From: Saccostrea echinata
Lineage: Eukaryota
Length of the DNA stretch: 64,000 nt
NCBI RefSeq assembly: GCF_033153115.1
Contig: NW_026889779.1
Location: 3,472,001 to 3,536,000, forward strand
Direction: 5' to 3'
A program made the position numbers and the translations under genes. Shown one piece after another: positions 11,815-44,152 of the stretch. The notes beneath the pieces are model-generated. The model did no database searches. It was given only the letters and a program-made list of their open reading frames with translations, and had not been told where the DNA came from. Each line of letters starts with the position of its first letter. Positions within the stretch are counted from its first letter, which is position 1.

Positions 11815-14800
11815 ATGTCTATAAGTATTGGAATAAGACAATTGTTTTTGTCCTTTGTTTTGGTTATCTGGGTTTCCTTTTCGTCGTCTTGGAGTTCTTC
11901 TGATGTTCAGACAATAAGGAAGAATGGGGTCCTCGGCACCAGCTATGACAGACTGGTCCGTCCGTCTCAGACTACAAATGTCAGTGTGGCTCTGAACCTT
12001 ATCACCATCAACTTTATGGTATGGAACATTTTTATATCACGAGTTTATAAGAATATTGTCTGTTAGCTCTCATTCTTATTTTTAAATACTTGTTTCTACT
12101 TTTTTTCTATATGATTTTCTACAAGATAAAATAAGATTATTTAATATTCAAATAAAGCCCCATAATTTCAACAATACATACATAGTATCCTTTAAACAAG
12201 GTATTAATTGTATTATTTTTCTTTAATTTGCCTGACATTCTGTAATTTATTATACTTGTTGTGGAATGAAATGAAAGACGTCTTGATCGTATAGTGGTTT
12301 ATTTGAGACTTGTTATTATCTATAGAAACAAATGAAAGTATTATGACGTCACAACAAAGTTAACGTTACATGAACTCGCGGATAATCCATGACACTCCGG
12401 GCACCAAAATGAATAGTAAAATTTTAAAAAGCTCATATTAAATTAACAGTTCCATTGAAATAAAAAGCAAGTTCATAATCATTAAATTAAGAAGTCCATT
12501 CATGGATTCTTTCTTTGGCTTTTGTTTTTGATACTCGATCCTCTTCTGTTCAGACACTTTATATTTCAGGTTTTGTATCAGAGTCTCAGTTTCCGAGTCT
12601 TTGTGACGTATTTCTGTGTTAGCTTTCTCCAGCTCCATGTTCCGAGTCTGTAGGTTGTTGTTTTGTTTCTTTATCTCTGCCATGTCCCTGAGATTCTTTT
12701 TCTGTGACTTATCTTTTTCCTTCTCCTCGGCCACTTTAAGTTTTTCTATCAGCTGAGTTTTCTCCCTTAGTTCCTCATCACGAGTCTTTACGGCGAACGT
12801 GTAATCTCTCTCCCTGCTATCTATGGAGCCCTGTAAAGTTTGCAGCTGATTTTCCAATCTTTGTACGTTGATCTTTAGATCACTTATTTCCCTTCGAGTG
12901 TAATCACATCGTGATTGAAGACTGTTGTTTTTAGCCTTGAGATGCTCCGAGTCAGAGGTGGCGGTTTTCAGTATGTCAACTTGGCCCCTTAATTCCTGAA
13001 TCTCCTTATGCAGACGTCCGTTTTCGTACGCCAGTTTATTTTTCTGTTCCATCATTTCCTTCATCACATTCTCTACACGAGTCTGAAAATCCTTTTGTTG
13101 GTCGAATTGTGACACTCTCTCTATCAGGGTGGCATTCTCATGCTCCAACGCGTTCCTCCTTTGTGTCTGTGTCTTCAGCTCTGATTTTAATTTTTGTATC
13201 TCGTTAGTCAACTTGTTACGTTCTTCTAGCATGGAGTCCATGGTCCGACTTATCGAAGAGATAGGCCTAGCTGTATTCAGTAAAACACTTGTAGGTCGAT
13301 GTTCAACGTTCAGTACTGTGGTTTCTGGCTTCTTACTCGTTTCTACGATATTGACACTTGTTGATTTGGTGGGCTCGTCTCTGTCCCTCGTTAGTTTCAT
13401 GTTGCATATACTTGTGTGGTGTTTTTTCTGACACTTTTTACACCTGTTGCGGGATTTACAATCTGAGGCGCGGTGGTTTCCCAAGCAGTTGAAACATAAT
13501 TTCTTCCGTTTTAAGATGTCAAATCTTGCACTTACGTCTGTAACTTTCTTACAATCCCCTGGAAAATGATTCTCTGTGCAACAATAAATGCATGGGCGGC
13601 TCTTCATCTCTGTTGTTTCAACATGAGGAGTTGACTCTCTCGTTTTCTGGTTATGTGAATAATGAACGTTGCGTTGTTTCTTTGAGGCTCCGGTAAGAAA
13701 CATTGCTGTTGCGTGAAATCCATCGCCGTTTTCAATCTGGCCTGATTCAAGGATTTTGACTTCTTTGCTGATAGCTTTACGAAGATTTTGTAGTGAAATG
13801 TTGTCACCATCGTACTCACGTGCAATGTTTTTCCTAATTTCAGTTGGTAGCTTGTTGATTATGACTGGAATAAGTAATGCTCCAAACATCTCTTGTCTTT
13901 GTCCTAGACACTCTAAACTCCTGACATGAGATTCCAAGAAGTCTCCATAATTTCTTAAACTAATGGCGTCATTTATGGGGGCAGGAAGTTCGATGAGTGC
14001 TCTCATATGAGCGTTAATAATTTTCTGTGGCTGACCAAATCGTTCTTTGAGCAAGTCTATTGCCGTTTCGTAATTAGCATTTGTAAGCGCAAATCCTGCT
14101 ATTGTTTGTGCTGCTGTGTCGCGTAATTGAGCTTTGAGATAGCTAAACTTTTGAATTGGCGTCAAAGTATGATTGCAATGAATCGTTGATTCGTAAGAAT
14201 CCCAAAATGTATTCCATTCTAATACATCTCCGTAAAAATGCGGAAGATCTAACTTTGGTAATCGGTGATTATTACTGGCGTGTTGGGATGTTAATGACAA
14301 AACATTTTCCTGGCTACTTTGTGCATTGAGATCAGTGGCAGGAACATTGTTCAAAATATTCTCACAAGCCGTTTCACTTGAGTTAATTGTAGCTGACGTG
14401 TTAACGTTATTATCATAAATTTCTGTGGCGGGTGTAAAACACTCAGCATTGGCATTCAAAGTTTTACATGGAATTTTTTCTGTAAATTTTTCAGTTTGCC
14501 TAATTTTACAGTCTAATTCATACATGTACTCATCTGTATTTGCGATTTCTGTTTCGATGTCTTCTTCAGATAGGGTATCCAATATGATGTCATTCAATTC
14601 TTGTAGGGTCTGCCTTTTCAGCGCGAGAGACTTTCTAATTATGTTGATTTCGTCGGTAATTTCTTCACTGGCTGAATTTTCCTTCAAGTCCAAAAACCGT
14701 CCAAATAGCTTTGTAACTGCTGATCTGTTGCCGGCTCGTATAGCTTTTAGTCTTCCTTCCATTGTATGTACTACCTAGAATTCCGTCGGTCACGGCACCA

Positions 14801-17800
14801 AAATGTTGTGGAATGAAATGAAAGACGTCTTGATCGTATAGTGGTTTATTTGAGACTTGTTATTATCTATAGAAACAAACGAAAGTATTATGACGTCACA
14901 ACAAAGTTAACGTTACATGAACTCGCGGATAATCCATGACAATACTTATGTTAAAACATTTCCTATATAAAGTTAAGAGGGTAAAATAATTTTTTTTATA
15001 ATCTGAAATTTTCTCGTCTAGCAAAGATATACCTCGGGGTTTATTATACATTTATTGACTGGGTTCGAGGGCAACATGGTTTTGTCGGACCCAAGAACCA
15101 AACTGTTTGCCTGAGGCCGTTAGGCCTCGGTCATAACTTTTGAAGAGTTGGTGCTAGGGCTTTCATATTTCAAATTTGTATTTCTTGTGATAAGTCCTTC
15201 CCCAAGATACCAATAGTTGTGACCTTTTATTCTTGACCTTGGAGTTTAACCTAATTTTGAAAAACTTCAACCTCGCCATAGCTTTTAAATGGTTGGTGCT
15301 AGGGCTTTTATATTTCACATGTATATTCCTTGTGACAAGACCTTCCCGTTTGCACTATTAATTTTGACCTTGGAGATCAACCTATTTTGAAAAACTTTAA
15401 CCTTGGTCATAACCTTTGAATGGCTGGTACTAAGGCTTTCATCTTTCAGAGGTGTATTCCTCTGAAAGGAACGTACGGGCTGCCATACGGGGGCATCAGT
15501 GTTTCACGAACACATCTTGTGTTCGTACAGAATTAAATAAGAACCAATTTTCAAAGGTATAACAATATGTGTTATTATACTTCTGTTAAAACATTTCCTA
15601 TGTAAAGTTAAGAAAGTGAAATAACTATTTTTCTATTTATAGTCTGAAAATTTTACGTCTTGCAAAGCTATTTTCATGTTTTGCCTATGAATTTGTAGCA
15701 TCATGTAACCCAACCCTCAGAAATTATGATATACATCAGCATAAAAAAACGATCACTTGTGGTGAGTGGGATAGCTCTTTCTTCAAAGAAACATTACAAA
15801 TTACCTGCTTCATTTCTAAGATAAAAATTTTCAAAAAAATATTTTTAATATTCCCAACAATCAAAATGAATTTGAATTACCATACCTTTACTGGATTCCG
15901 AAACTCCATAAAACTCCTTACAAACAAAGATATATAGCGGGTTCCAGTAAATGTTCTATATCCAGCCCCTTTCTTTACTCCTCACTAAAATATTTACAGC
16001 AGTGAAGGGGAAACTTCACGAGTACTTTACAACAGTATGTTTGAGAATTGGTGTAAATCAGATGTTGATACTTAAAAACTCCAAGGAACTTTAAAAAAAT
16101 TTGAAATCACAAAATTTTAACAAAATCAATAATATCAAAATGTACGACTTTTCCCCGATCATGACAAGAAGCACACGTACGGCGGATGTGACCAGTCGGC
16201 AGGGAATGCTCACTCCTCCATGGCACCTGATCCCACTTCTGATGTTTTTGGAGGTCCGTCTTTGCTCTGCTTCCGATTTGTATTGTCTAAATGGACTTTG
16301 AGCTTGAATACTCTTCATTATCTTCGTATTTCATGCAAGCCCTCGAGAATTTGTTCACGATGTGGGTTTGATAAAAGAGCTATCCCACTCTCAACCAGTG
16401 GATAAGTGTATATAATACAGCAAAGCATCAAATCGGCCGCAAACAAAATTCAAAAGTACATTCACAACTCAGCATCCAAGGAGAGCGCAAGATATTCAAA
16501 ACTGAGTGATCATTTTTATTTCAGACTGTCTTCAAAGCAAATAAATAAATATATAAATAATAAAATAAAATAAATAAATGGAAATTTGTTCATCAAACTG
16601 ATTCATCGATGTAATAAAGTCAGTGATTAATGATAAGAATTCATTGTCATCGAAAGGAAGATGTAGTTCTATTATTTTCAGCATTCGCATCTTCTCGAGT
16701 CTTCCCGGTAAGCTCAGAAAAACACAATTTTCCGCTTGCCGGAAAGACCTAAAAGTTGTGATTGTATATTCAGGGAGGACCTATTGTAAACTCTTTTTAT
16801 ATCATCATAAATTAAGAAATGAAAATGCAATTGAAACATAATAACAACAATTAAAATTTTGTTTAAAGCAAGGTTTTAAACATATTTTATTCATGATTTT
16901 ATACATGTTATCATTAAAAAATTATTTTACTGAACTTATATAGAAATAGAGGAGTAACGTCTCATTTCCCCATGTGCACACAATTAGATCGGCCTCTGCT
17001 GCGGCCGATAATAAGGAGAGGCATTATTTAGTTATAAGAACTTGTTTCCAGTCCTTTTGATGTTGTCAATAAAATATATGTCAAAGCAACAAGGAACTAA
17101 ATCTACTTAATAACCAATGAATTGAAATTAAATTATTTTAATTACGAACTTACTTAATTACCACTGAAATGATTCGTGGAAAGTAAGTTTATTATATTAT
17201 GTTGTAGAAAAGATAAGTTAAAAGGACCTTTAGATTACATGACAAAGCAGAAAAAATATAAAATTCCACATGTATAATAATTTGAAAAGTCTTAATTTTT
17301 AGGATATAAAGAACCAGGTTTTATCAACGACAGGCTGGATAGAGGCGGTAGGTCTGTTTTGAGAAAATATCTGCACAGAATAATTTTACTCTTTCCAAAA
17401 TAGCTTAAAATTTACTCCGAATACTTTCACTAAAAGTAACACTGTGTTACATTCAGAGTTGGGAAGATCACAGGTTGGCCTGGAATGTTTCTAAATACCC
17501 AAACATAACAGATATCTTCGCAGACGAGAGTGAGGTGTGGCGGCCTGTTTTCTTCATAGATAACTCGTTAGTTTCAACTTTATTTTCCTTTCTAATTTTC
17601 CTATCTTTCAAAACGTCAAAAGATATTTTTGATCAGCATGCATACATTTAAAAATTCCGAAAAACATGGTAATATTTCTGATAAACATGAATTTCCAATG
17701 CCATTTTGTACAATTTTGTAATCTAAAAAAAAGGTTCAAGTATTTTCATCATATCTTGAAATGAAGGAAGATCTTTTTTTTTTTACATGTATTTGAATTT

Positions 17801-33590: not shown

Positions 33591-36500
33591 CTATTTTTGA
33601 ACGTCCCTTTTTCTGTGTTCTTTTGCACGTAAAATAGTCTGTTCAAACAGTTTACAGTAGAGTTTCACAGCGTCTGGGGAATCATCATTCCCAGGAATGG
33701 GATATGTAATAAAGGTAGGGTTACAATTAGAGTCCACAACACCTACAGTGGGTATAAGCATTTTGGCACATTCTGTGACAGCTATATGATCACTTCCAAT
33801 ACTATTCTGTGTATGAAGAAAGATAACAACATCAGGGTGCCTGGTTAGATTACTGAAAAGTCTGTCAATATTGGTCAGAAGACCTGATTTCCAGAAGCGG
33901 CAGTGGGAATATTCACCAGCATTGCGAGCTGTTTTTTCCACAAGAGGCATGTGCTGAGCATTTCTGGAAACAAATAATACAATGCCTCCTCTGTACACCA
34001 CATGAGCTATAAAATTTAAGGCCAAGTGTAAACGTGGTAAAGTTCTGTCCAGATCAAATATATCTGTATTGTGCCGGAGTCCATAGAGAAAGGACACCAT
34101 ATATGGATGTCTACATCCGAAGTGATGACCATAATGCACCCTGTTTCTGTAAAGTGTTTGCATGTCTACCATTTCTTTGACTTGAAAAAAATCTGGATGC
34201 TGCAAAGCATTATCTTCAAATGTATCCCCTAGGAGACCTGCAAAATAGTCATTAACTGCAATTTAATGTACAGTAACAGTTAAATATTATTATACCTCTG
34301 TGAATTTTTTCTATATAAAAATTTGATGAATAAACATGCTATTTTTTCCAAACAGCTCCTACTGTCGAATAGTTTTTGTGCTATTTGCCCATGGTGAAAT
34401 AGTCATTAAACTATTCACCGACAGCATTCTGTTTTCCTCGCTTTTCATCTCGGAACTCTTCTGGTTTTATCAAGATTGTGACGTAACACAAGTAAAAACT
34501 GCTTCAGTATAATAAAACACCTATTTACTGACTATTCGGACAATAGCAAGTTTATCGTCCCCCTCAACAGCAACTATTTCCCTCAGCTGCGCCTCGGGAA
34601 ATAGTTGCTGTCTTGGGGAACGATAAACTTGCTATTGTCCTCATAGCCAGGTGTATAATATAACATAGTTAATTAAAAACAAAACTTTGTCAAAAGCCCT
34701 TTTTTCTTTCTAATAACTGCATTTTTGTCATCATTGGTTTTTTTTTGGGGGGGGTGGGGGGGTGGTTACTCTCACTCACCACATGTAGTGTTGATAATAT
34801 AAAAGATTAATGGCTTCACTACAAGTTACTAGGTGGCTGGCTCATGAAAGTCTTACAAGTAAACATCAGGAAATGTAAGAGTCTTCACACTAAAGTCTTA
34901 ACAATAATAAATGTATTTGTAGTGCATTGCTTTGCAAATGATAACAGTTTCTTCATATTATGAGTCATTACTCATTAGACTTTATATACTGTATGTGTAC
35001 TTGAAAAAGCAGGCTTCATATTTCAGCTGCTTTGGTGCAGACAGCAATGTGCTAATTCATGAATCCCATTAATAAATCATAAATAAATACAATACATAGC
35101 GAGGACATGTGTAATGCTAATTCATGATTACGCCAATCACTCAATACCAAGTGATTGCGCTTAATTTTGAATATGTCAATTTTTGTACACGGACAGTATT
35201 TGCACAGGGGTTCAAAATACTTCAAGCCCAACCCAATTCACTGGTCACAGTAGCCTAGTGGTAGGACACTCACTTCATAATTGGGAAGCCCAAGTTTGAT
35301 TCTCATTCACCACACCACATCAAATCTAAGATGTATACATATGTAGTGACTGTTCCTTCATCACGCCCCCGGAATTAGAAGTGAGAGTCTTTTGAATATG
35401 AGACCTTAAAAACCAAGGTCCTGTCAAGGTAGGCATTGGCATGCTAAAGAACCCACAGTGGCCCTGAGTGCCCAGAAAAGTTCTTAATTTGAAGCTTTAA
35501 CTGGTATATGGTGATATCTCTATAGGAGTGAAAAATTCTCAAATGGTACATAAAACAACATACAATCAATCAATGAAGCCCAATGCCCCTAGACTTTTTT
35601 TCTGGATTTAGACTTGCCACATAGAAAAGCCATATATGTGATCCTGGTCAGATATTGTAAATATCAATAATAAACAGAATATTCAATATTGTAAAATTTA
35701 GAACTTGATAACAAATTATTTAGCAATTCATTTTACACCATCAAAATCTTGTGTTTTGTTGCAAGCCATTTTCACAATACATCACTGAACATGCAAATCT
35801 TTATTTCAGTTTTTTAATTTAAAATATTCATATTTTTTCTTAAGCCTAAAAAGAATTTTTGATACATTTAGATTTGACCAAAATAACAGAAAACTTAGAA
35901 ATATATCAAAATCAAGAGGAATGATATATTTTAAGGACCCTAGTGTGAAAAACATCTGACTTGTTTGTGAAGAGAACACAATATTGTATGTATATCAATT
36001 TTAAGAATTATTTTTGTGATTTGTAAACTTTGTTTTTTTGAATATAATATGTTCAATCAAAAACAAATGTCTTCTAATTAAGGAATAAATTTAATAGCTA
36101 CCCAATTTATACAGTATAAAGTGGGTTGAGACAGTTTACGCTTTATAAACCGCAAAGCAGGAATCTGAAATACTTACATACACAATATTTCATTTCTGAA
36201 ATATTAAAGATCCCAGAACTTTATGATACCCATAAAGCTTGAAAATATACCCACGTTTATACTCATTTTCCATTGGTTTGTAATCAACCAGCTCCACTTC
36301 TTTTGCCAAAGGCTTCTCTGTTTGGTTTTTAAATACTTTTTCCTCATATATCCTCTCAATTCGGAGTGGTCGGGGGAGAACTACCTTAGCCTTTGTATCT
36401 GTCTTGTACTTTCTCTGGGGACACAGATGAGGGATGTAGGCTCCTAAAAATAATTAGCATGCCGTAACAGAGTTATCTTTCTTTCAGTGCGATAGGCACA

Positions 36501-38324: not shown

Positions 38325-41300
38325 ATGAATAACGCATTACGGTTATGTGCAGTGTGTATCCTCTGGACACTTTCTGCAAAAGCTCAGACTGATTTAACCA
38401 GAGTCGCAGATAGTTATGGACCTTTGGTTGTTGAAACAACAGTCAAACTACTCCGTGATGCATGTTTAATTAATGACCACTTATTTCTTCGACGAATTGC
38501 CTCTTTTGAGACTAATGATGGCCTTGCTATTCTGCCGGGGGACCACGGTGGTATCTGGAAGGTAAACCATACGAAAAACCTTTCGCATCACACTGAATGA
38601 TTGACAGTCATTTTTTTTTTAAGAAATTGAATTTAAATTTTGAGAGCAAAATACCATGCTGGAAAATAAAAGCGGTCGGTAATTTATTTTACATGTACTC
38701 TGGATTATGAGATTTAAAGTACATGTATGTTAGAAATGTTTTCCAAAAGAATTTTGATTTAAATTTTGACACTAATACCGAAAAATTACGCATCGCACAA
38801 ACAAAATACGTAAACACAGTTTTCATGAATATTTATTATCGTACGAACTCGAATTATCACACTTGCAAACCTACCGACGAATATGTGAAACATGTTGGAA
38901 AAACATGTTTTTATTCGTGTCTCTTGTAACATTTTTAATTTTCTTTCACAACTGAAATTTATTTCTGTGAACAATATTCCGTTCAAGCGTATATATATGG
39001 TTTTGATGCTTTTTAAAGCTAGAAAATTCTATTTAATTCATTTGATTTCTCCTTTTCCAATGATTCATTGAGATCTGAGGTTCTAAATTCCGTAACCATC
39101 AGGAATCGAAATAAATTTGGCTTACATGAAAAAAGAAATGCATTTGTGTGAGCTATTTGGTTCTATCAGTAGTTTCGGACCACATCACTTTAAGGTCATA
39201 GGATATTCAAAATCGGGAGAAAGTAGTATTTTACTATAGCTACTTATAACTTGTTGTGTTTAGACTCAAACTGATTTGTTTCAAAATAAAAGTAAGGCTA
39301 AATTTTATGTGTTTTTAGGGGAAATAAATTTTTCTCATGATTTTAAATTTCAATATACGCGTAGATATAGAAGTATAGATTTGGGGAGAGTGCAAAAATA
39401 AGTGTGGCTTGACAGGAAAACTTCGTTATAAATACTAGTATGTGTTTTAGCAATAATAAAGCCTTCGTGTACTAACTATTTTATATATTTCTTAGTAGAA
39501 ATATATGTCTTTGAGTATTTTTGTACATAACGAGGTGTCAATATAGCTCTGATTTATATATAGGTGGATGAGGAAATGTTTAACTATACCCAGTCGGGAA
39601 CGCCCAATTTGCAAAACATTTACAAAGAGGTGTTCAGAACCCTGTTTGTGGTATGGAAAGGAATAACATGGAAAGAATTGAATAAACCCTTATATTCCGG
39701 ACTTGCTGCTGCAATTTATCTCAGAGCAAAAACCAACGAAACTATGCCCCTTTCAAAACCAGACCAAGCAAAATTTTGGAAGAAGTACTTTCGAACAAAT
39801 GGAAACGAACAAGCTTTTCTAACAGCAATGCAGGCAATGCCTGAAGGTAATTATAACTATTTTTATTTCTAATGCGTATTTTCAAAGATTACACAGTCTG
39901 ATTAACTTCCGGCGAATACCGGGGGTGACTACAGTTTTGTACTCGGTCAGTCGGTCAGTTAGTTGAACATTTTTTTTTTTTTTGAGATGCTTGCAGATGT
40001 TGAACTAATTTTTGGTACATGTATGTGGGTTACCTTAACTCACGACCTTCTGTAGATATCCATAATGATATTTTTTCNNNNNNNNNNNNNNNNNNNNNNN
40101 NNNNNNNNNNNNNNNNNNNNNNNNNNNNNNNNNNNNNNNNNNNNNNNNNNNNNNNNNNNNNNNNNNNNNNNNNNNNNNNNNNNNNNNNNNNNNNNNNNNN
40201 NNNNNCTCGGTATTGCATTTTCAGTACTCTCAAATTGCTAGTTTGATTGTTGATATTACATGTACAATATAATTTTCTGAGATATATTTTTTTCCGCAGG
40301 TTGCAGCGTCCCTACACAAGTAGATCTTACCTTCATTGTTGAGACGTCTACTAATGTTAAATCCGCAGAGCTGAGACAGACAAAAGACTTCATCAACAGG
40401 ATCGTAAACGGTTTAGTTGTTTCTAGTTCGAAGGTTCAACTTGCTATGGTTACATATGGAAGTCAGGCAAACATTTTATTTCATTTGAATGCCTACTCAA
40501 ACAAAATAGACGTGGTTTCTAACATTGATTCCATGCCTTTGAGCGGGGGATTGGTTGCTACAAATAAAGCCTTAAAACTAACGAGAGAAGAAGTATTCGT
40601 GGCCAAAAATGGTGCCAGAGCTGGTGCTGCACAAGTAGCGATCCTCATTACCAAAAGTCCGCCAGACAACAAGACGGAAACCGAAATCGAGTCCTCTATC
40701 CTAACCGGAAGTGATGTAACGCTATTCACCATCGCAATTGGTTCAGCCCTTAATTCAAATGATCTGGTTAACATCAGCAGCCAACCTAACTGTGTTCATT
40801 ATACTCACATAGACAATTTCTTGGATTTGCAAGACTTTGCTGCTGAAATGGATGAAGTTATATGTCGAGGTAATTATTTGACAAATATATATTTAGAAAA
40901 TTTCGAAAACCGTACTACTTGTAGAAAGTAAACATTTATAGATCAACAAGAAAACTTTTCTTAAACTGTTTTAATTCTTAACCAAATTACTCTCCATGAT
41001 TAAGTTATTTGTTCATTATCCAGCTATTATAAAGACCAAATCTTCATAAGTTTGGTATGCATTTAGCGCCAGTCAAATTGTCAAATGGAAGATTTACCCA
41101 TCCATGCAATGTGGATGCCTTACTTTCCATACCTGACAATCCTTACGGTACCACGATTAAGGTAAGAGCTCAAGATTAATACGCAATTCAAAAATGTAGG
41201 AAACTTGCACGTAATAACTTTACAAGGCCAATCCAAAATACAGTCGTTCAAGACTCTTAGTAAAGAATGATACAAACATGTCCATGACTTTTTATCAGAT

Positions 41301-44152
41301 AAGCCTGGTTCAAGTACCAAGGAATATGCTTACCCTTTAACATTTTGCACAGTGTCTCTACAATGTTACATAACATTTGGTTTGTTTTCTTACAACTTGT
41401 TTTCAAGACTCTGAAGTACATGTTAACTTTTGAATGATTGTGTCACCTAGTAATACAGTCTAATTCGTACTTCAAAAACAACACTGCACCAAAATTTTTG
41501 AAGTATGACTTAAAGTTAAATTGCATGTTGTTATAATTTCAATGAAGAGCCGCATGTAAGGGGTAATGTTACATGTATTGAAAAAAAAAAACAGCGCATG
41601 GTTAACATAGTAAACACTTCATGTTAATAAATGTAACGATGATGTGTAGTGTATGAATACTGACCTACCTCGTGTTGCTAATATAAGATTTTTAAACTGA
41701 AAGAATGGATCTTGTATATCACAGGAGTTGGGAGTACCTATTATTTTTATCAGCATTTTCAGTAAATTAAAAAAAAGTAATACATGTTCAATTGTAAAAT
41801 ATTTAATGTTTTTAATCATAGGTATTACGTATTATTTTCTTTTCTGAAAACTTCGATAAATTTGATAGGTACCCACACTTCTTTGTTTTATATACAGATT
41901 TCAGTTGGCTCTGGATCAAGGACAGTTTATACTTCGTACATGTTTGGACTACCGAACACGGCTAAGAATGACCTAGCCTCCACAGTAGATAACCTCAGTC
42001 CTCTGACCTTGTATCTCCATGACAACAACCCCAGTTACTACATCAGTCTGAAAAGTGTTCTAGGATTGAATTGTATGGATAACTATACAGTTGATGTTCA
42101 TGTGGGACCACCGAGCTCAGTATGTAGGTACCACCTTAAAACAATTTGAACAGTAGATATTGCAATTTACAAATATTAGATAAATTCTGCCCTGCTGTTG
42201 AATATAAAGATGGCATACTGCACAAATTCTCAACAGTTCATTTAATATATGTATATCATTGATTTAAATTTGACAAAATACATGAAGTAAATTTTGATTA
42301 TGCATAATTCTAACTAATTTCAACCTTTATTGTAGCGCCTGGAACTTTTTGCGTAGAGCGAGGGATCAAAACAGATTGTTCTAATGTAACAATGAACTCA
42401 ACACCAGCGACATCCGCAACCCCAGCTACCTCTGCAACCCCAGCAACCTCCACAATATCAGTACCTGCAACAGCAGCAGTACCTTCCACACCTGTTGTAA
42501 CCACAGCAAGTACATGTAAGTATGAAAAAAGATAAAGAATCAAAGTACCAAACCTGTATTCTTATTTTTTATGTGATTATTTTTCTCCATCTTGCCAGCA
42601 TCTGCACCGTTTTGCCACCTTGTCTCATAAAAAAGAGACCATATTTAGAGGTATTTTAAAAATCTATGATTTTGCACATAAAAACCCCCAGAAAAAAAAC
42701 AGTCTTTTAAGCATAAAAACGATCAAGTTCAAAAATGATCTCGTGTACCATAATTTAAAAAAACCTCAAAATTATTAGGTGACCACTTTGTCTTCCACTG
42801 AGAGTCTTGGATACAAACATGTACGTGTAATTCATAGTTACATCATTTTTTCCAAGATGGTTTTCAATGAGATATTGCATATCAATATCATATTGAGGAT
42901 TTCTGACAAACAATTGTTCATTTTGGGACAAATCTTATATCATGCAAGAGGTCACTTGTATAACAGGATATCAGTATAACAGGATATCTGTCAGGGAAAA
43001 GTATGTGTTTGAGAATTTAAAATGATGTAGCGACTTATTATTTCCATACATTGCATATGAATAGATCTACTCTCTTAGAATTTATAATCAACGTTTTGCG
43101 AACTTTCGACTATAGAACATGTACTATTGGAACGGACATAATCACTTGAATCTAACACTTAAAACAACTTTAGTTATTCTGGACTGGGCATAACAAACCA
43201 AAATTTGCGTTTTGACTTTTTTCACTAAGTGATTCTAGCAAGGTTTCAGACTCCTATTTTTCTTGTTATCGTGTCATTTGTAGATCAGACGACCCCGAAT
43301 ATTTGTGTCGGGAACATAAAAGTCGCCCAACACCCCAATGACCCAACCAAATTCCTGATGTGTGATATTAAAGGCCAGCTTCTTACAGTTCAGTGTCCAC
43401 ATAAGGAGATATTTTGCGCTGCCACAAATCTCTGCGAGGCACATTGCCCTACGACAACTACAATCAGCCAATCAGCAACAACTCCTATTGTGCCGTCTAC
43501 GTCATTGGTACCAGCTACAAACTCCACAACGCCCAGGAAACCTATCATCATAATAGTTTTTACCACTGGTCCCCCGGTGATCGTGGGTTCGAGAACAGCA
43601 CCCGCAGCCTCCGCGACAACCACTATTCCCGCCCCAAAGACGACTTTTACGAGTACACCTGTTGGAACAACACAACGCATTCCCACTACCACAACATTAC
43701 AAAAGGTTATATCAACGAATACTGCATCAACAACAACTCATCGAGCAACAACAAATCAAAACTGTCACCAAAACCCATGCACAGTACATGCTTTCATGAA
43801 TAGCATTTTGTATTTCCCCGCATGTGATGAACACGAATATTATCAATGTTTGGGAATAAATTCTAAGAAAACAGTACGATGTCCATCAGACAAAATTTTC
43901 AATCCTGATATATTGAATTGTGTGAATGAATTCGTTTTTAACGAAGAAACTCAAACTTTTGATAAAACTATTCCAAATCCATGCAAAAATACACGAGGAG
44001 ATAGATATTTTGTTCATCCTACTGACAAGTCCAAATTCATTCACTGTGACGGGTTTTGGAATGGCTTTATGAGAACATGCCCATCTGGTGAAATATTTCA
44101 TGAAATGGCACAGTCCTGTATAATGATTATTAGCTCAGCTTTTGGAAAATAA
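38325..44152 (+). CDS. Secreted multidomain protein A: lysozyme-like N-domain, VWA, unknown beta domain, Thr-rich mucin stretches, 3 chitin-binding (CBM14-like) domains; about 819 aa
   Basis: Exons 38325-38561, 39564-39846, 40300-40869, 41067-41161, 41898-42123, 42336-42515 and 43284-44152 (2460 nt, phases consistent). Signal peptide; VWA DLTFIVETSTN...GARAGAAQVAILIT...LFTIAIG; C-terminal HPxD..F..C...CP...F...C repeats. Confidence 0.85.
40078..40205. other. Assembly gap (128 N) in intron 2 of gene A
   Basis: Run of N. Confidence 1.

What the first reader, a model, noticed from the sequence alone, without database searches (positions are those of the whole stretch)
12257..14941. Pol-less BEL/Pao LTR element whose Gag is fused in frame to a captured CCDC150-like coiled coil
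Seen: near-identical 138-bp LTRs, a 5-bp TSD, a tRNA-His-like PBS, and one unbroken 774-aa ORF that fills almost the whole internal region (41 nt before it, 43 nt after). The Gag similarity stops at VLLNTA (aa 498, about position 13269). Established: in BEL/Pao polyproteins this VLLxTA motif leads into protease, RT, RNase H and integrase; none is present here. Instead there are about 250 aa of intronless coiled coil. Inference from memory: EMMEQKNKLAYENGRL, HLKAKNNSLQSRC and AVKTRDEELREKTQL resemble, in order, segments of animal CCDC150 (e.g. KNKLAYENGKL). This suggests a spliced host mRNA was captured by template switching, kept in frame, and is still mobilised in trans. An intact chimeric ORF in a young insertion hints at selection on a Gag-coiled-coil protein, for example for capsid targeting or parasitism of an autonomous helper.
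Basis: partly seen in the sequence, partly recalled or inferred. Interest (0 to 1): 0.92.

Follow-up and report, generated by a model that had tools for sequence, protein, structure and literature searches.

The report
Pol-less oyster retrotransposon with captured CCDC150
A young, 2.7-kb jumping gene in a Saccostrea oyster genome has lost all its enzymes and instead carries, fused in frame to its capsid (Gag) gene, a piece of the spliced host gene CCDC150. It is a clear new example of a known way that retrotransposons pick up host genes, and I found no good sign that the fused protein is useful.

Summary
There are 138-bp LTRs (137/138 identical, TGT…ACA), a 5-bp target-site duplication (TSD) ATACT, a tRNA-His primer-binding site (PBS), and one 774-aa minus-strand ORF filling the internal region. 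Residues 1-498 are a BEL/Pao Gag (DUF1759, three zinc knuckles). No protease, RT, RNase H or integrase is present.

Residues 506-744 are CCDC150. They are 82-91% identical to Saccostrea CCDC150 and about 72% to Crassostrea. They join three host exon-exon borders with no intron sequence, and about 90 host codons are missing internally.

The same fusion (same 5' joint, same deletion) occurs in at least 4 annotated S. cucullata genes and 1 S. echinata gene, so this is a multi-copy family from a single capture.

Gag groups by host species together with Gag-PR-RT relatives (AU test p=1e-5), whereas the cargo groups all chimeras together. This points to recombination with autonomous-type partners.

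The cargo evolves more than 10 times faster than the host gene. Changes hit host-invariant and hydrophobic sites as often as other sites. In the S. cucullata copies the last exon is frameshifted. Selection on the fusion protein is therefore not shown.

This is a known kind of element (LTR-mediated retroposition, maize Bs1, gag-onc). Host DNA could not be fetched, so dN/dS and junction microhomology remain untested.

The parts
12252..12256 (.). Target-site duplication ATACT (left copy)
   Evidence: Same 5 nt at 14942-14946 directly outside both LTRs
12257..12394 (-). 3' LTR (element runs on the minus strand), 138 nt, TGT...ACA
   Evidence: 137/138 identical to 14804-14941. On the sense strand it carries the TGACGTCA palindrome, a TATA-like TATAGATAA and AATAAA
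12395..12437 (-). 43-nt 3' untranslated spacer. It holds a second copy of the 12-mer GGCACCAAAATG (12400-12411) and ends ...CGGAG at the LTR, where a polypurine tract (PPT) would be expected, although it is poor in purines
12438..14762 (-). Single 774-aa ORF: Gag fused in frame to a CCDC150 fragment (stop codon 12438-12440)
13269..14762 (-). Gag, aa 1-498. N-terminal helical hairpin, DUF1759 core (aa 176-314 = 13821-14237), three CCHC-type knuckles (13404-13592), ends VLLNTA
   Evidence: Pfam E=8e-37. 93-95% identical to S. echinata relatives P0148 and P0106. Knuckles. Fold:
13248..13268 (-). Junction zone, aa 499-505 (RPISSIS). It contains the remnant of the first residues of the protease region of autonomous-type relatives (IAPVS) and a 3-aa tandem duplication specific to the S. 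echinata-like copies
   Evidence: alignments
12723..13247 (-). Cargo segment 1, aa 506-680 = host CCDC150 aa 464-640 (S. cucullata numbering). It covers host exons E1, E2 and E3 minus its last 4-5 codons. Joints with no intron sequence lie at 13092|13091 (E1|E2) and 12900|12899 (E2|E3)
   Evidence: 82-83% identical to Saccostrea CCDC150. Exon borders:
12531..12722 (-). Cargo segment 2, aa 681-744 = host aa 727-791, i.e. the end of the exon before E5 plus part of E5, with no intron sequence at the joint 12675|12674. The internal deletion joint with segment 1 is at 12723|12722, inside the element's only long polypurine run (12712-12728)
   Evidence: 89-91% identical to Saccostrea CCDC150. Polypurine run:
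12441..12530 (-). ORF tail, aa 745-774, of unproven origin (degenerate cargo or element 3' sequence). Predicted hydrophobic terminal helix. Its first 15 residues are shared with the S. cucullata protein P0067
14789..14800 (-). Primer-binding site, 12 nt complementary to the 3' end of tRNA-His, 3 nt from the LTR
14804..14941 (-). 5' LTR. Its U5 part holds 16 nt (14831-14846) complementary to tRNA-His nt 5-20
14942..14946 (.). Target-site duplication ATACT (right copy)

Best explanation
This is a non-autonomous member of a Saccostrea-specific BEL/Pao LTR-retrotransposon family. Once, in the Saccostrea lineage after its split from Crassostrea/Ostrea, the whole pol region (protease, RT, RNase H, integrase) was replaced by about 0.7 kb of spliced CCDC150 mRNA. 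The 3' joint, and the internal 90-codon deletion, were made by reverse-transcriptase template jumps. The 5' joint was made either by such a jump at a short overlap (VS) or by splicing of a read-through transcript into the host exon. The product keeps LTRs, PBS and an intact Gag, and is transcribed as a pseudo-retrotransposon. It is copied and integrated by the enzymes of autonomous relatives. It also recombines with them, presumably through co-packaged RNAs, which keeps its 5' half like the local helper. The CCDC150 helix is mostly a passenger that drifts at close to the neutral rate. In the window copy it is still in frame, so a Gag-plus-190-residue-helix protein would be made if the copy is expressed. 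Shown: the anatomy, the origin and spliced state of the cargo, the single capture, the multi-copy and two-species distribution, the Gag/cargo tree conflict, and the fast relaxed evolution. Inferred: trans-mobilisation, co-packaging, and the mechanism of each joint.
For: Anatomy. Cargo is CCDC150: E=3.5e-100 and 80-88% identity in two colinear blocks. An all-against-all HMMER search with the cargo finds only CCDC150 orthologues and exon-sized fragments, and no BEL polyprotein. Spliced origin: host exon ends, defined by ORF fragments that read from exon into intron (next residue V=GT; preceding codon ending AG) in several bivalves, fall at WIN K557|D558, Y621|T622 and E696|I697, where the cargo is continuous. 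Single capture: the window copy, S. echinata P0106 and the four S. cucullata chimeras share the 5' joint. The copies that extend that far (all but the truncated P0106) also share the deletion and several derived residues, and form one clade (93/91) at the Saccostrea CCDC150 node. Family: P0039, P0142, P0143, P0144 (S. cucullata) and P0106 (S. echinata, 94% identical to the window Gag). Autonomous-type relatives continue from VLLKTA into DUF1758 protease and RT (P0067, P0148, P0149). Recombination: Gag aa 1-465 is 93-95% identical within a species between chimeras and Gag-PR-RT relatives, but 84-87% between species. The Gag tree groups by species, and chimera monophyly is rejected (delta lnL 105, p-AU 1.3e-5). 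P0067 joins Gag-PR-partial RT to the cargo tail. Passenger status: cargo branch lengths are 0.15 (window) and 0.34 (S. cucullata copies) against 0.005 for the host genes. Changes are spread evenly over host-invariant, variable and hydrophobic sites. S. cucullata replacements look like simulated neutral ones, and their last exon is read in another frame. Mechanism precedent, including Pao/BEL elements: PMC5131818.
Against: Microhomology at the joints, dN/dS, the LTR/PBS identity of a helper and true copy number are therefore untested. No full-length Gag-Pol of this family was seen, partly because the search tool has a length ceiling. The comparison proteins are automatic gene models that may hide stops or frameshifts behind predicted introns. 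In the window lineage, replacements are more conservative than simulated neutral ones (59% BLOSUM-positive against a mean of 39%, about the 98th percentile), and the cargo has no stop (P=0.08 if neutral). Some constraint therefore cannot be excluded. The Gag grouping was named after seeing the alignment.
Confidence: 0.8

Rival explanations
1. The Gag-CCDC150 coiled-coil fusion is itself selected. The added 190-residue helix would change Gag multimerisation or targeting, so that the element parasitises its helper better, or so that the host gains a dominant-negative Gag that restrains the family.
For: An unbroken 774-codon ORF in a young insertion. The fusion has persisted in two species. In the window lineage, replacements are more conservative than neutral simulations (about the 98th percentile), with no stop (P=0.08). 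AF2 predicts that the helix runs unbroken across the deletion joint (aa 507-697, pLDDT about 80-90).
Against: The cargo evolves >10x faster than host CCDC150. There is no sparing of host-invariant or hydrophobic heptad-type positions. S. cucullata copies show neutral-like replacements and read the last exon out of frame, and the S. echinata model P0106 breaks off after about 30 cargo residues. This copy was picked because it is intact, which is an ascertainment bias.
Confidence: 0.12
2. Two independent captures of CCDC150 occurred, one in each Saccostrea species, by each species' own BEL/Pao element. This would explain why Gag groups by species without any recombination.
For: The Gag tree groups chimeras with same-species Gag-PR-RT relatives.
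Against: Both lineages share the same 5' joint residue, the same 90-codon internal deletion that starts 4-5 codons before an exon end, and several derived substitutions (for example Q->R at the joint, S->F, Q->H, R->Q). They form one clade (93/91).
Confidence: 0.04
3. There was no capture. Either an LTR element or two solo LTRs landed by chance around a host CCDC150-like retrogene, or the arrangement is an assembly chimera.
For: Only one copy lies in the window.
Against: The two LTRs share one 5-bp TSD. Gag and cargo form one ORF with no stop. The same fusion is annotated at five other loci in two independently assembled genomes.
Confidence: 0.02

Closest known systems
LTR-mediated retroposition chimeras of animals (Tan et al. 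2016, PMC5131818), including captures by the Pao element BATUMI in Drosophila and BEL18_AG in mosquito
   Same: A partial, intronless host mRNA copy replaces part of the internal ORFs of an LTR element. The result is flanked by the element's own ends, co-transcribed, and able to go through further retroposition rounds as a non-autonomous element.
   Different: Here all of pol is replaced. The cargo is fused in frame to a complete Gag. The chimera is old (about 15-30% protein divergence from its source), multi-copy and present in two species. Junction microsimilarity could only be seen at protein level (a 2-residue overlap).
Maize Bs1 (Elrouby and Bureau, as cited in PMC5131818)
   Same: An LTR retrotransposon without its own enzymes that carries captured host gene fragments, forms a chimeric reading frame with element sequence, and is mobilised in trans.
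   Different: Bs1 is a plant element with pieces of three genes. Here an animal BEL/Pao element carries one gene fragment with an internal deletion.
Replication-defective, acutely transforming retroviruses with gag-onc fusions (own knowledge)
   Same: Gag is fused in frame to spliced host coding sequence. Pol is lost, a helper is needed, and recombination with the helper occurs. The classical model has a splice- or deletion-made 5' joint and an RT-made 3' joint, which fits a 5' joint at an exon start.
   Different: There is no env and no evidence of infectivity or of any cellular effect. The cargo is a structural coiled coil of unknown function. The family is germ-line resident.
Gag-bearing non-autonomous LTR elements such as LARD/TRIM-like derivatives and helper-dependent partners (own knowledge)
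   Same: LTRs, PBS and packaging functions are kept, enzymes are supplied in trans, and sequence is exchanged with the autonomous partner.
   Different: Those usually arise by plain deletion. Here the deleted part is replaced by host coding sequence that is read through from Gag.
Domesticated Gag genes (Arc, PEG10/SIRH, Fv1-type restriction genes; PMC10516033 listed)
   Same: A Gag-derived protein without pol that could act on capsids.
   Different: Domesticated genes have lost their LTRs, are single-copy and syntenic, and are under purifying selection. This copy has fresh LTRs and a TSD, and its family is multi-copy.

Membership tests
BEL/Pao LTR retrotransposon | Paired LTRs ending TG...CA with a 4-6 bp target-site duplication | tested here: met
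   138-nt LTRs, 137/138 identical, TGT...ACA, TSD ATACT
BEL/Pao LTR retrotransposon | tRNA primer-binding site next to the 5' LTR | tested here: met
   12 nt complementary to the tRNA-His 3' end, 3 nt from the LTR. The oyster's own tRNA-His was not available.
BEL/Pao LTR retrotransposon | Gag of the DUF1759 type with CCHC knuckles | tested here: met
   PF03564 E=8e-37; three knuckles
BEL/Pao LTR retrotransposon | Pol with protease (DUF1758/Peptidase_A17), RT, RNase H and integrase (an autonomous element) | tested here: not met
   No pol domain in the ORF or in any frame of the element. Relatives P0067, P0148 and P0149 have protease and RT after the same Gag. It is therefore a non-autonomous derivative, not an autonomous member.
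LTR-mediated retroposition chimera (Tan et al. 2016) | Host-derived internal segment that replaces element ORF sequence between the element's own ends | tested here: met
LTR-mediated retroposition chimera (Tan et al. 2016) | The host segment is intronless, i.e. derived from spliced mRNA | tested here: met
   Three exon borders are joined with no intron sequence. The borders were inferred from intron read-through fragments of other bivalves, not from the Saccostrea locus itself.
LTR-mediated retroposition chimera (Tan et al. 2016) | Short microsimilarity between element and mRNA at the switch points | tested here: inconclusive
   Protein level only. There is a 2-residue overlap (VS) at the 5' joint and an EEREK/KKEK-type similarity at the internal deletion. 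The 3' joint was not located. DNA of host and helper was not obtainable.
LTR-mediated retroposition chimera (Tan et al. 2016) | Further rounds of retroposition as a non-autonomous element | tested here: met
   Copies at at least six loci in two species, and a young insertion with a TSD here
CCDC150 orthologue (host gene) | Full-length protein of about 1000-1100 aa encoded by a multi-exon gene | tested here: not met
   Only host aa 464-640 and 727-791 are present, intronless and inside an LTR element
Domesticated Gag gene | Loss of LTRs, single syntenic copy, purifying selection | tested here: not met
   Intact LTRs and TSD, and several copies. Synteny and dN/dS could not be tested.
gag-onc type defective retrovirus (works-like comparison) | Helper-dependent replication and a cellular effect of the fusion protein | not testable with these tools
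   Only inferred from the absence of pol and the mosaic relation to Gag-PR-RT relatives

The most novel reading that the evidence does not exclude
In the S. echinata-like lineage, the Gag-CCDC150 helix fusion is kept open by selection. It would act on capsid assembly either as a better parasite of its helper or as a host-beneficial dominant-negative Gag. That would make it a natural 'Gag plus host oligomerisation domain' effector caught while it is still mobile.
Probability: 0.12. Interest if true: 0.75.

Novelty: new member of a known kind. Interest (0 to 1): 0.45.

Why it matters
This is a clean animal example, outside insects and vertebrates, of an LTR retrotransposon that swapped its whole pol for spliced host coding sequence and then lived on as a multi-copy, two-species family. 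The conflict between the Gag tree and the cargo tree gives sequence-level evidence that such a chimera keeps exchanging its 5' half with helper-type elements. That process is usually only assumed. The family offers a natural system for three questions: how BEL/Pao Gag-only parasites are packaged, whether captured exons can become new genes (exon shuffling), and how fast captured host sequence decays. For annotation, it warns that the 'uncharacterized protein' models with DUF1759 plus a CCDC150-like tail in Saccostrea are transposon chimeras, not host genes.

Tried and rejected
I therefore have no dN/dS, no nucleotide microhomology and no LTR comparison.

2. No second copy, solo LTR or empty-site paralogue lies in the window. 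The right flank is repeated at 15577, but the left flank is not.

3. I tried to extend the cargo homology beyond KRIEY (aa 744) by three-frame comparison of the tail with host aa 777-866. Nothing convincing came out.

4. Rfam found no RNA family in the element, and ARAGORN found no tRNA gene in the window.

5. P0050 looked like a possible further chimera but is a plain C-terminal CCDC150 fragment of another bivalve.

6. I rejected exon skipping as the cause of the internal gap. The gap starts 4-5 codons before the exon end and ends 14-15 codons before the next mapped border.

7. I rejected 'the coiled coil is native to BEL Gag-Pol'.

8. The BEL/Pao review PMC3118150 had nothing on PBS or TSD.


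Full report
**1. What is there**

On the minus strand of the window lies a 2685-bp LTR element (12257-14941). Its two 138-nt LTRs differ at one position and end in TGT...ACA. The pentamer ATACT flanks both ends.

Three nucleotides inside the 5' LTR (14804-14941) sits TGGTGCCGTGAC (14789-14800). This 12-mer contains the first seven bases of tRNA-His-GTG as printed in a tRNA-fragment table (PMC6935952). It is therefore complementary to the tRNA's 3' acceptor strand plus CCA.

One ORF of 774 codons (14762->12438) fills the interior, leaving 41 and 43 nt. The window is about 33% G+C. It holds no other copy of the element or of its LTR.

**2. The protein**

Pfam finds only DUF1759, the BEL/Pao Gag core (aa 176-314, E=8e-37). 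It finds no protease, RT, RNase H or integrase. Three CCHC-type knuckles follow at aa 391-453.

An AlphaFold2 model built on a 29-row alignment has modest confidence overall (mean pLDDT 63). Its confident parts are:
- an N-terminal helical hairpin;
- the helical Gag core;
- one unbroken helix from aa 507 to 697 (pLDDT about 80-90), reached after a disordered linker.

**3. The cargo is CCDC150**

I searched aa 499-774 against 5.8 billion proteins. The best hits were CCDC150 of oysters:
- S. cucullata, E=3.5e-100, 80% identity;
- Crassostrea/Magallana and Ostrea, 66-71% identity.

Weaker hits were CCDC150 of other bivalves, an abalone and turtles.

A full HMMER scan of 1.84 billion cluster representatives, which has no length limit, again found only CCDC150 orthologues and exon-sized fragments. 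It found no BEL polyprotein.

The match to S. cucullata CCDC150 is colinear in two blocks:
- aa 501-672 with host aa 459-630;
- aa 689-744 with host aa 735-791.

The multiple alignment extends both blocks up to the deletion joint, which gives the segment limits (host aa 464-640 and 727-791) used under parts. About 90 host residues (REKKK...RGDLK) are missing between the blocks. The gap lies between two similar lysine/glutamate-rich stretches.

On a tree of the homologous 238 columns, the cargo sequences attach at the Saccostrea CCDC150 node, apart from the Crassostrea/Ostrea clade. The direction is therefore host to element, and the capture happened within the Saccostrea lineage.

**4. The cargo came from spliced mRNA**

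The representative library contains many short ORFs called on unspliced bivalve DNA. They run from a CCDC150 exon into the neighbouring intron. Homology stops where the next residue is V (GT), or starts just after a codon ending in AG. These ends cluster tightly in several species.

In S. cucullata numbering the mapped exons are:

| Exon | Host residues |
|---|---|
| E1 | V462-R515 |
| E2 | D516-Y578 |
| E3 | A579-K644 |
| E5 | I740-K807 |

The window ORF runs straight through three of these borders:
- E1|E2 at K557|D558;
- E2|E3 at Y621|T622;
- the border before E5 at E696|I697.

The internal gap starts 4-5 codons before the end of E3 and ends 14-15 codons before E5. It is therefore a deletion and not exon skipping.

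One caveat applies. The borders come from other bivalves, because the Saccostrea locus could not be fetched.

**5. A family from one capture**

The same Gag-cargo fusion is annotated elsewhere:
- four 'uncharacterized' S. cucullata proteins (P0039, P0142, P0143, P0144), 77% identical to the window protein;
- one S. echinata protein (P0106), 94% identical over 415 residues.

All share the 5' joint (…P-x-S then R-T-V/M-D-S). Every copy that extends that far, which is all but the truncated P0106, also shares the internal deletion and several derived residues. The cargo sequences that could be placed on the tree (the window copy and the four S. cucullata chimeras) form one clade with support 93/91.

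The window therefore most likely comes from S. echinata or a close relative. The exact window protein is not in the collection.

**6. Partners and recombination**

Three proteins of the same Gag family continue after VLLKTA into a DUF1758 protease and RT. They are P0067 and P0149 from S. cucullata and P0148 from S. echinata. The coiled coil is therefore not a normal part of this family's Gag-Pol.

Gag identities over aa 1-465 are as follows:

| Comparison | Identity |
|---|---|
| Window copy vs S. echinata Gag-PR-RT relative | 93% |
| Window copy vs S. cucullata chimeras | 85% |
| S. cucullata chimeras vs S. cucullata Gag-PR-RT relatives | 92-95% |
| S. cucullata chimeras vs S. echinata Gag-PR-RT relative | 84% |

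The Gag tree groups sequences by species. Forcing the chimeras into one clade costs 105 log-likelihood units (p-AU 1.3e-5).

Since the cargo shows a single origin, the 5' half of the chimeras must have been exchanged with autonomous-type elements after the two species separated. Two further observations fit this:
- In the S. cucullata chimeras the last 33 Gag residues are only 56% identical to their local relatives, while the rest is about 95% identical. This marks a breakpoint.
- P0067 joins Gag-protease-partial RT directly to the cargo tail, partly in another frame.

These are gene models, so DNA confirmation is needed.

**7. Is the fusion protein selected?**

Most of the evidence says no.
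- **Rate.** Cargo branches are 0.15 (window) and 0.34 (S. cucullata copies) changes per site, against 0.005 for the two host genes, which are 98% identical to each other.
- **Placement of changes, window copy.** Changes hit 11% of sites invariant in ten bivalve orthologues and 16% of other sites (p=0.5). They hit 14% of hydrophobic positions and 15% of the rest.
- **Placement of changes, S. cucullata copies.** The trend is similar and not significant.
- **Type of replacement, S. cucullata copies.** Replacements are as radical as simulated random mutations.
- **Reading frame.** All four S. cucullata models read the last cargo exon in a different frame.

Two weak signals point the other way for the window lineage:
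- 59% of its 34 replacements are BLOSUM-positive, against 39% simulated (about the 98th percentile).
- A stop-free cargo has P=0.08 under the simulation.

The simulation starts from the window DNA and ignores indels. This copy was also chosen because it is intact. I therefore treat the cargo as a largely neutral passenger and the functional-fusion idea as unrefuted but unlikely.

**8. Mechanism**

The general route is established for animals, including Pao/BEL elements. RT switches between element RNA and a co-packaged mRNA at short similarities, and the chimera then behaves as a non-autonomous element (PMC5131818).

The joints behave as follows:
- **3' joint.** It lies inside or beyond exon E5. 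The internal deletion also does not respect exon borders. Both fit RT jumps.
- **5' joint.** The host part begins at the first codons of exon E1. Its first two residues (VS) are also present at that place in the autonomous relatives (IAPVS).

Two readings of the 5' joint are equally possible. One is a template switch at a 5-6-nt overlap that happens to lie at an exon start. The other is splicing of a read-through transcript from a cryptic donor (the V codon starts with GT) into the acceptor of E1, as in the classical oncogene-capture model. Only nucleotide sequences of host and helper can decide.

**9. Comparison and novelty**

The element works like the LTR-mediated retrocopies of Tan et al., like maize Bs1, and like defective gag-onc retroviruses. 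It is a member of the BEL/Pao superfamily only as a non-autonomous derivative, because the pol criterion is tested and not met.

Literature searches found no description of this family or of CCDC150 capture. I rate it a new member of a known kind. The unusually clear evidence for long persistence and for exchange with helpers is what makes it useful.

**10. Limits**

- All three word-index protein searches and the single representative search were used.
- No full-length helper could be seen, because candidates above 1634 residues were out of range.
- No human contig was met, and the N run was not touched.

Noticed in passing
window 14831-14846 and 12284-12299 (both LTRs): The U5 part of the LTR carries, on the element's sense strand, 16 nt complementary to tRNA-His nt 5-20 (the plus strand reads TGATCGTATAGTGGTT). 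It occurs only in the two LTRs, with 0 expected by chance. It lies 30 nt from the PBS, which pairs with the other strand of the same acceptor stem. It looks like an extended primer-template contact, as known for Ty1, Ty3 and HIV-1.
   Followed up: partly
window 12400-12411 and 14794-14805: The 12-mer GGCACCAAAATG occurs exactly twice in 64 kb. One copy spans the PBS/5'-LTR border. The other lies 5 nt inside the 3' LTR. So a copy of 'LTR end + spacer + first 7 nt of the PBS' sits where a polypurine tract is expected. Unexplained.
   Followed up: partly
window 12712-12728: The only polypurine run of 12 nt or more on the element's sense strand (17 nt) lies exactly on the cargo's internal deletion joint. 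It is also where the RT-to-cargo joint of the S. cucullata protein P0067 maps. It may be a hot spot for RT template jumps.
   Followed up: partly
window 12441-12503 (ORF aa 754-774): The ORF ends in a hydrophobic, predicted helical segment of about 20 residues with unproven origin. Its upstream part (QKQKPKKES...) is shared with P0067.
   Followed up: partly
window 12344-12351 / 14891-14898 and neighbours: The very short LTR packs a perfect TGACGTCA (CRE-like) palindrome, a TATA-like TATAGATAA 20 nt downstream, and an AATAAA that overlaps the tRNA-His-complementary motif.
   Followed up: no
window 33594-34205 (-): A 204-aa single ORF matches Ribosomal_S2 (40S protein SA type), E=6e-40. It may be an exon or a processed retrocopy.
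   Followed up: no
window 43229-44152 and 49303-50115 (+): Two ORFs contain chitin-binding peritrophin-A (CBM_14) domains. They are probably exons of neighbouring paralogous host genes.
   Followed up: no
window 14942-15000 vs 15577-15635; 15132-15461: The sequence just right of the insertion is repeated 635 nt downstream (86% identity). Between the two copies lie 95-107-nt direct repeats (76-78% identity). The element sits in or beside another repeat.
   Followed up: no
window 40078-40205: A run of 128 N (gap or masked). It was left untouched.
   Followed up: no
proteins P0039, P0142-P0144, P0067, P0106, P0148, P0149 (S. cucullata and S. echinata RefSeq models): These 'uncharacterized protein' gene models are transposon-derived. 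Several seem to bridge frameshifts or deletions. For example, P0067 and P0148 lack about 60 Gag residues, and P0144 and P0039 read the cargo tail in different frames.
   Followed up: partly
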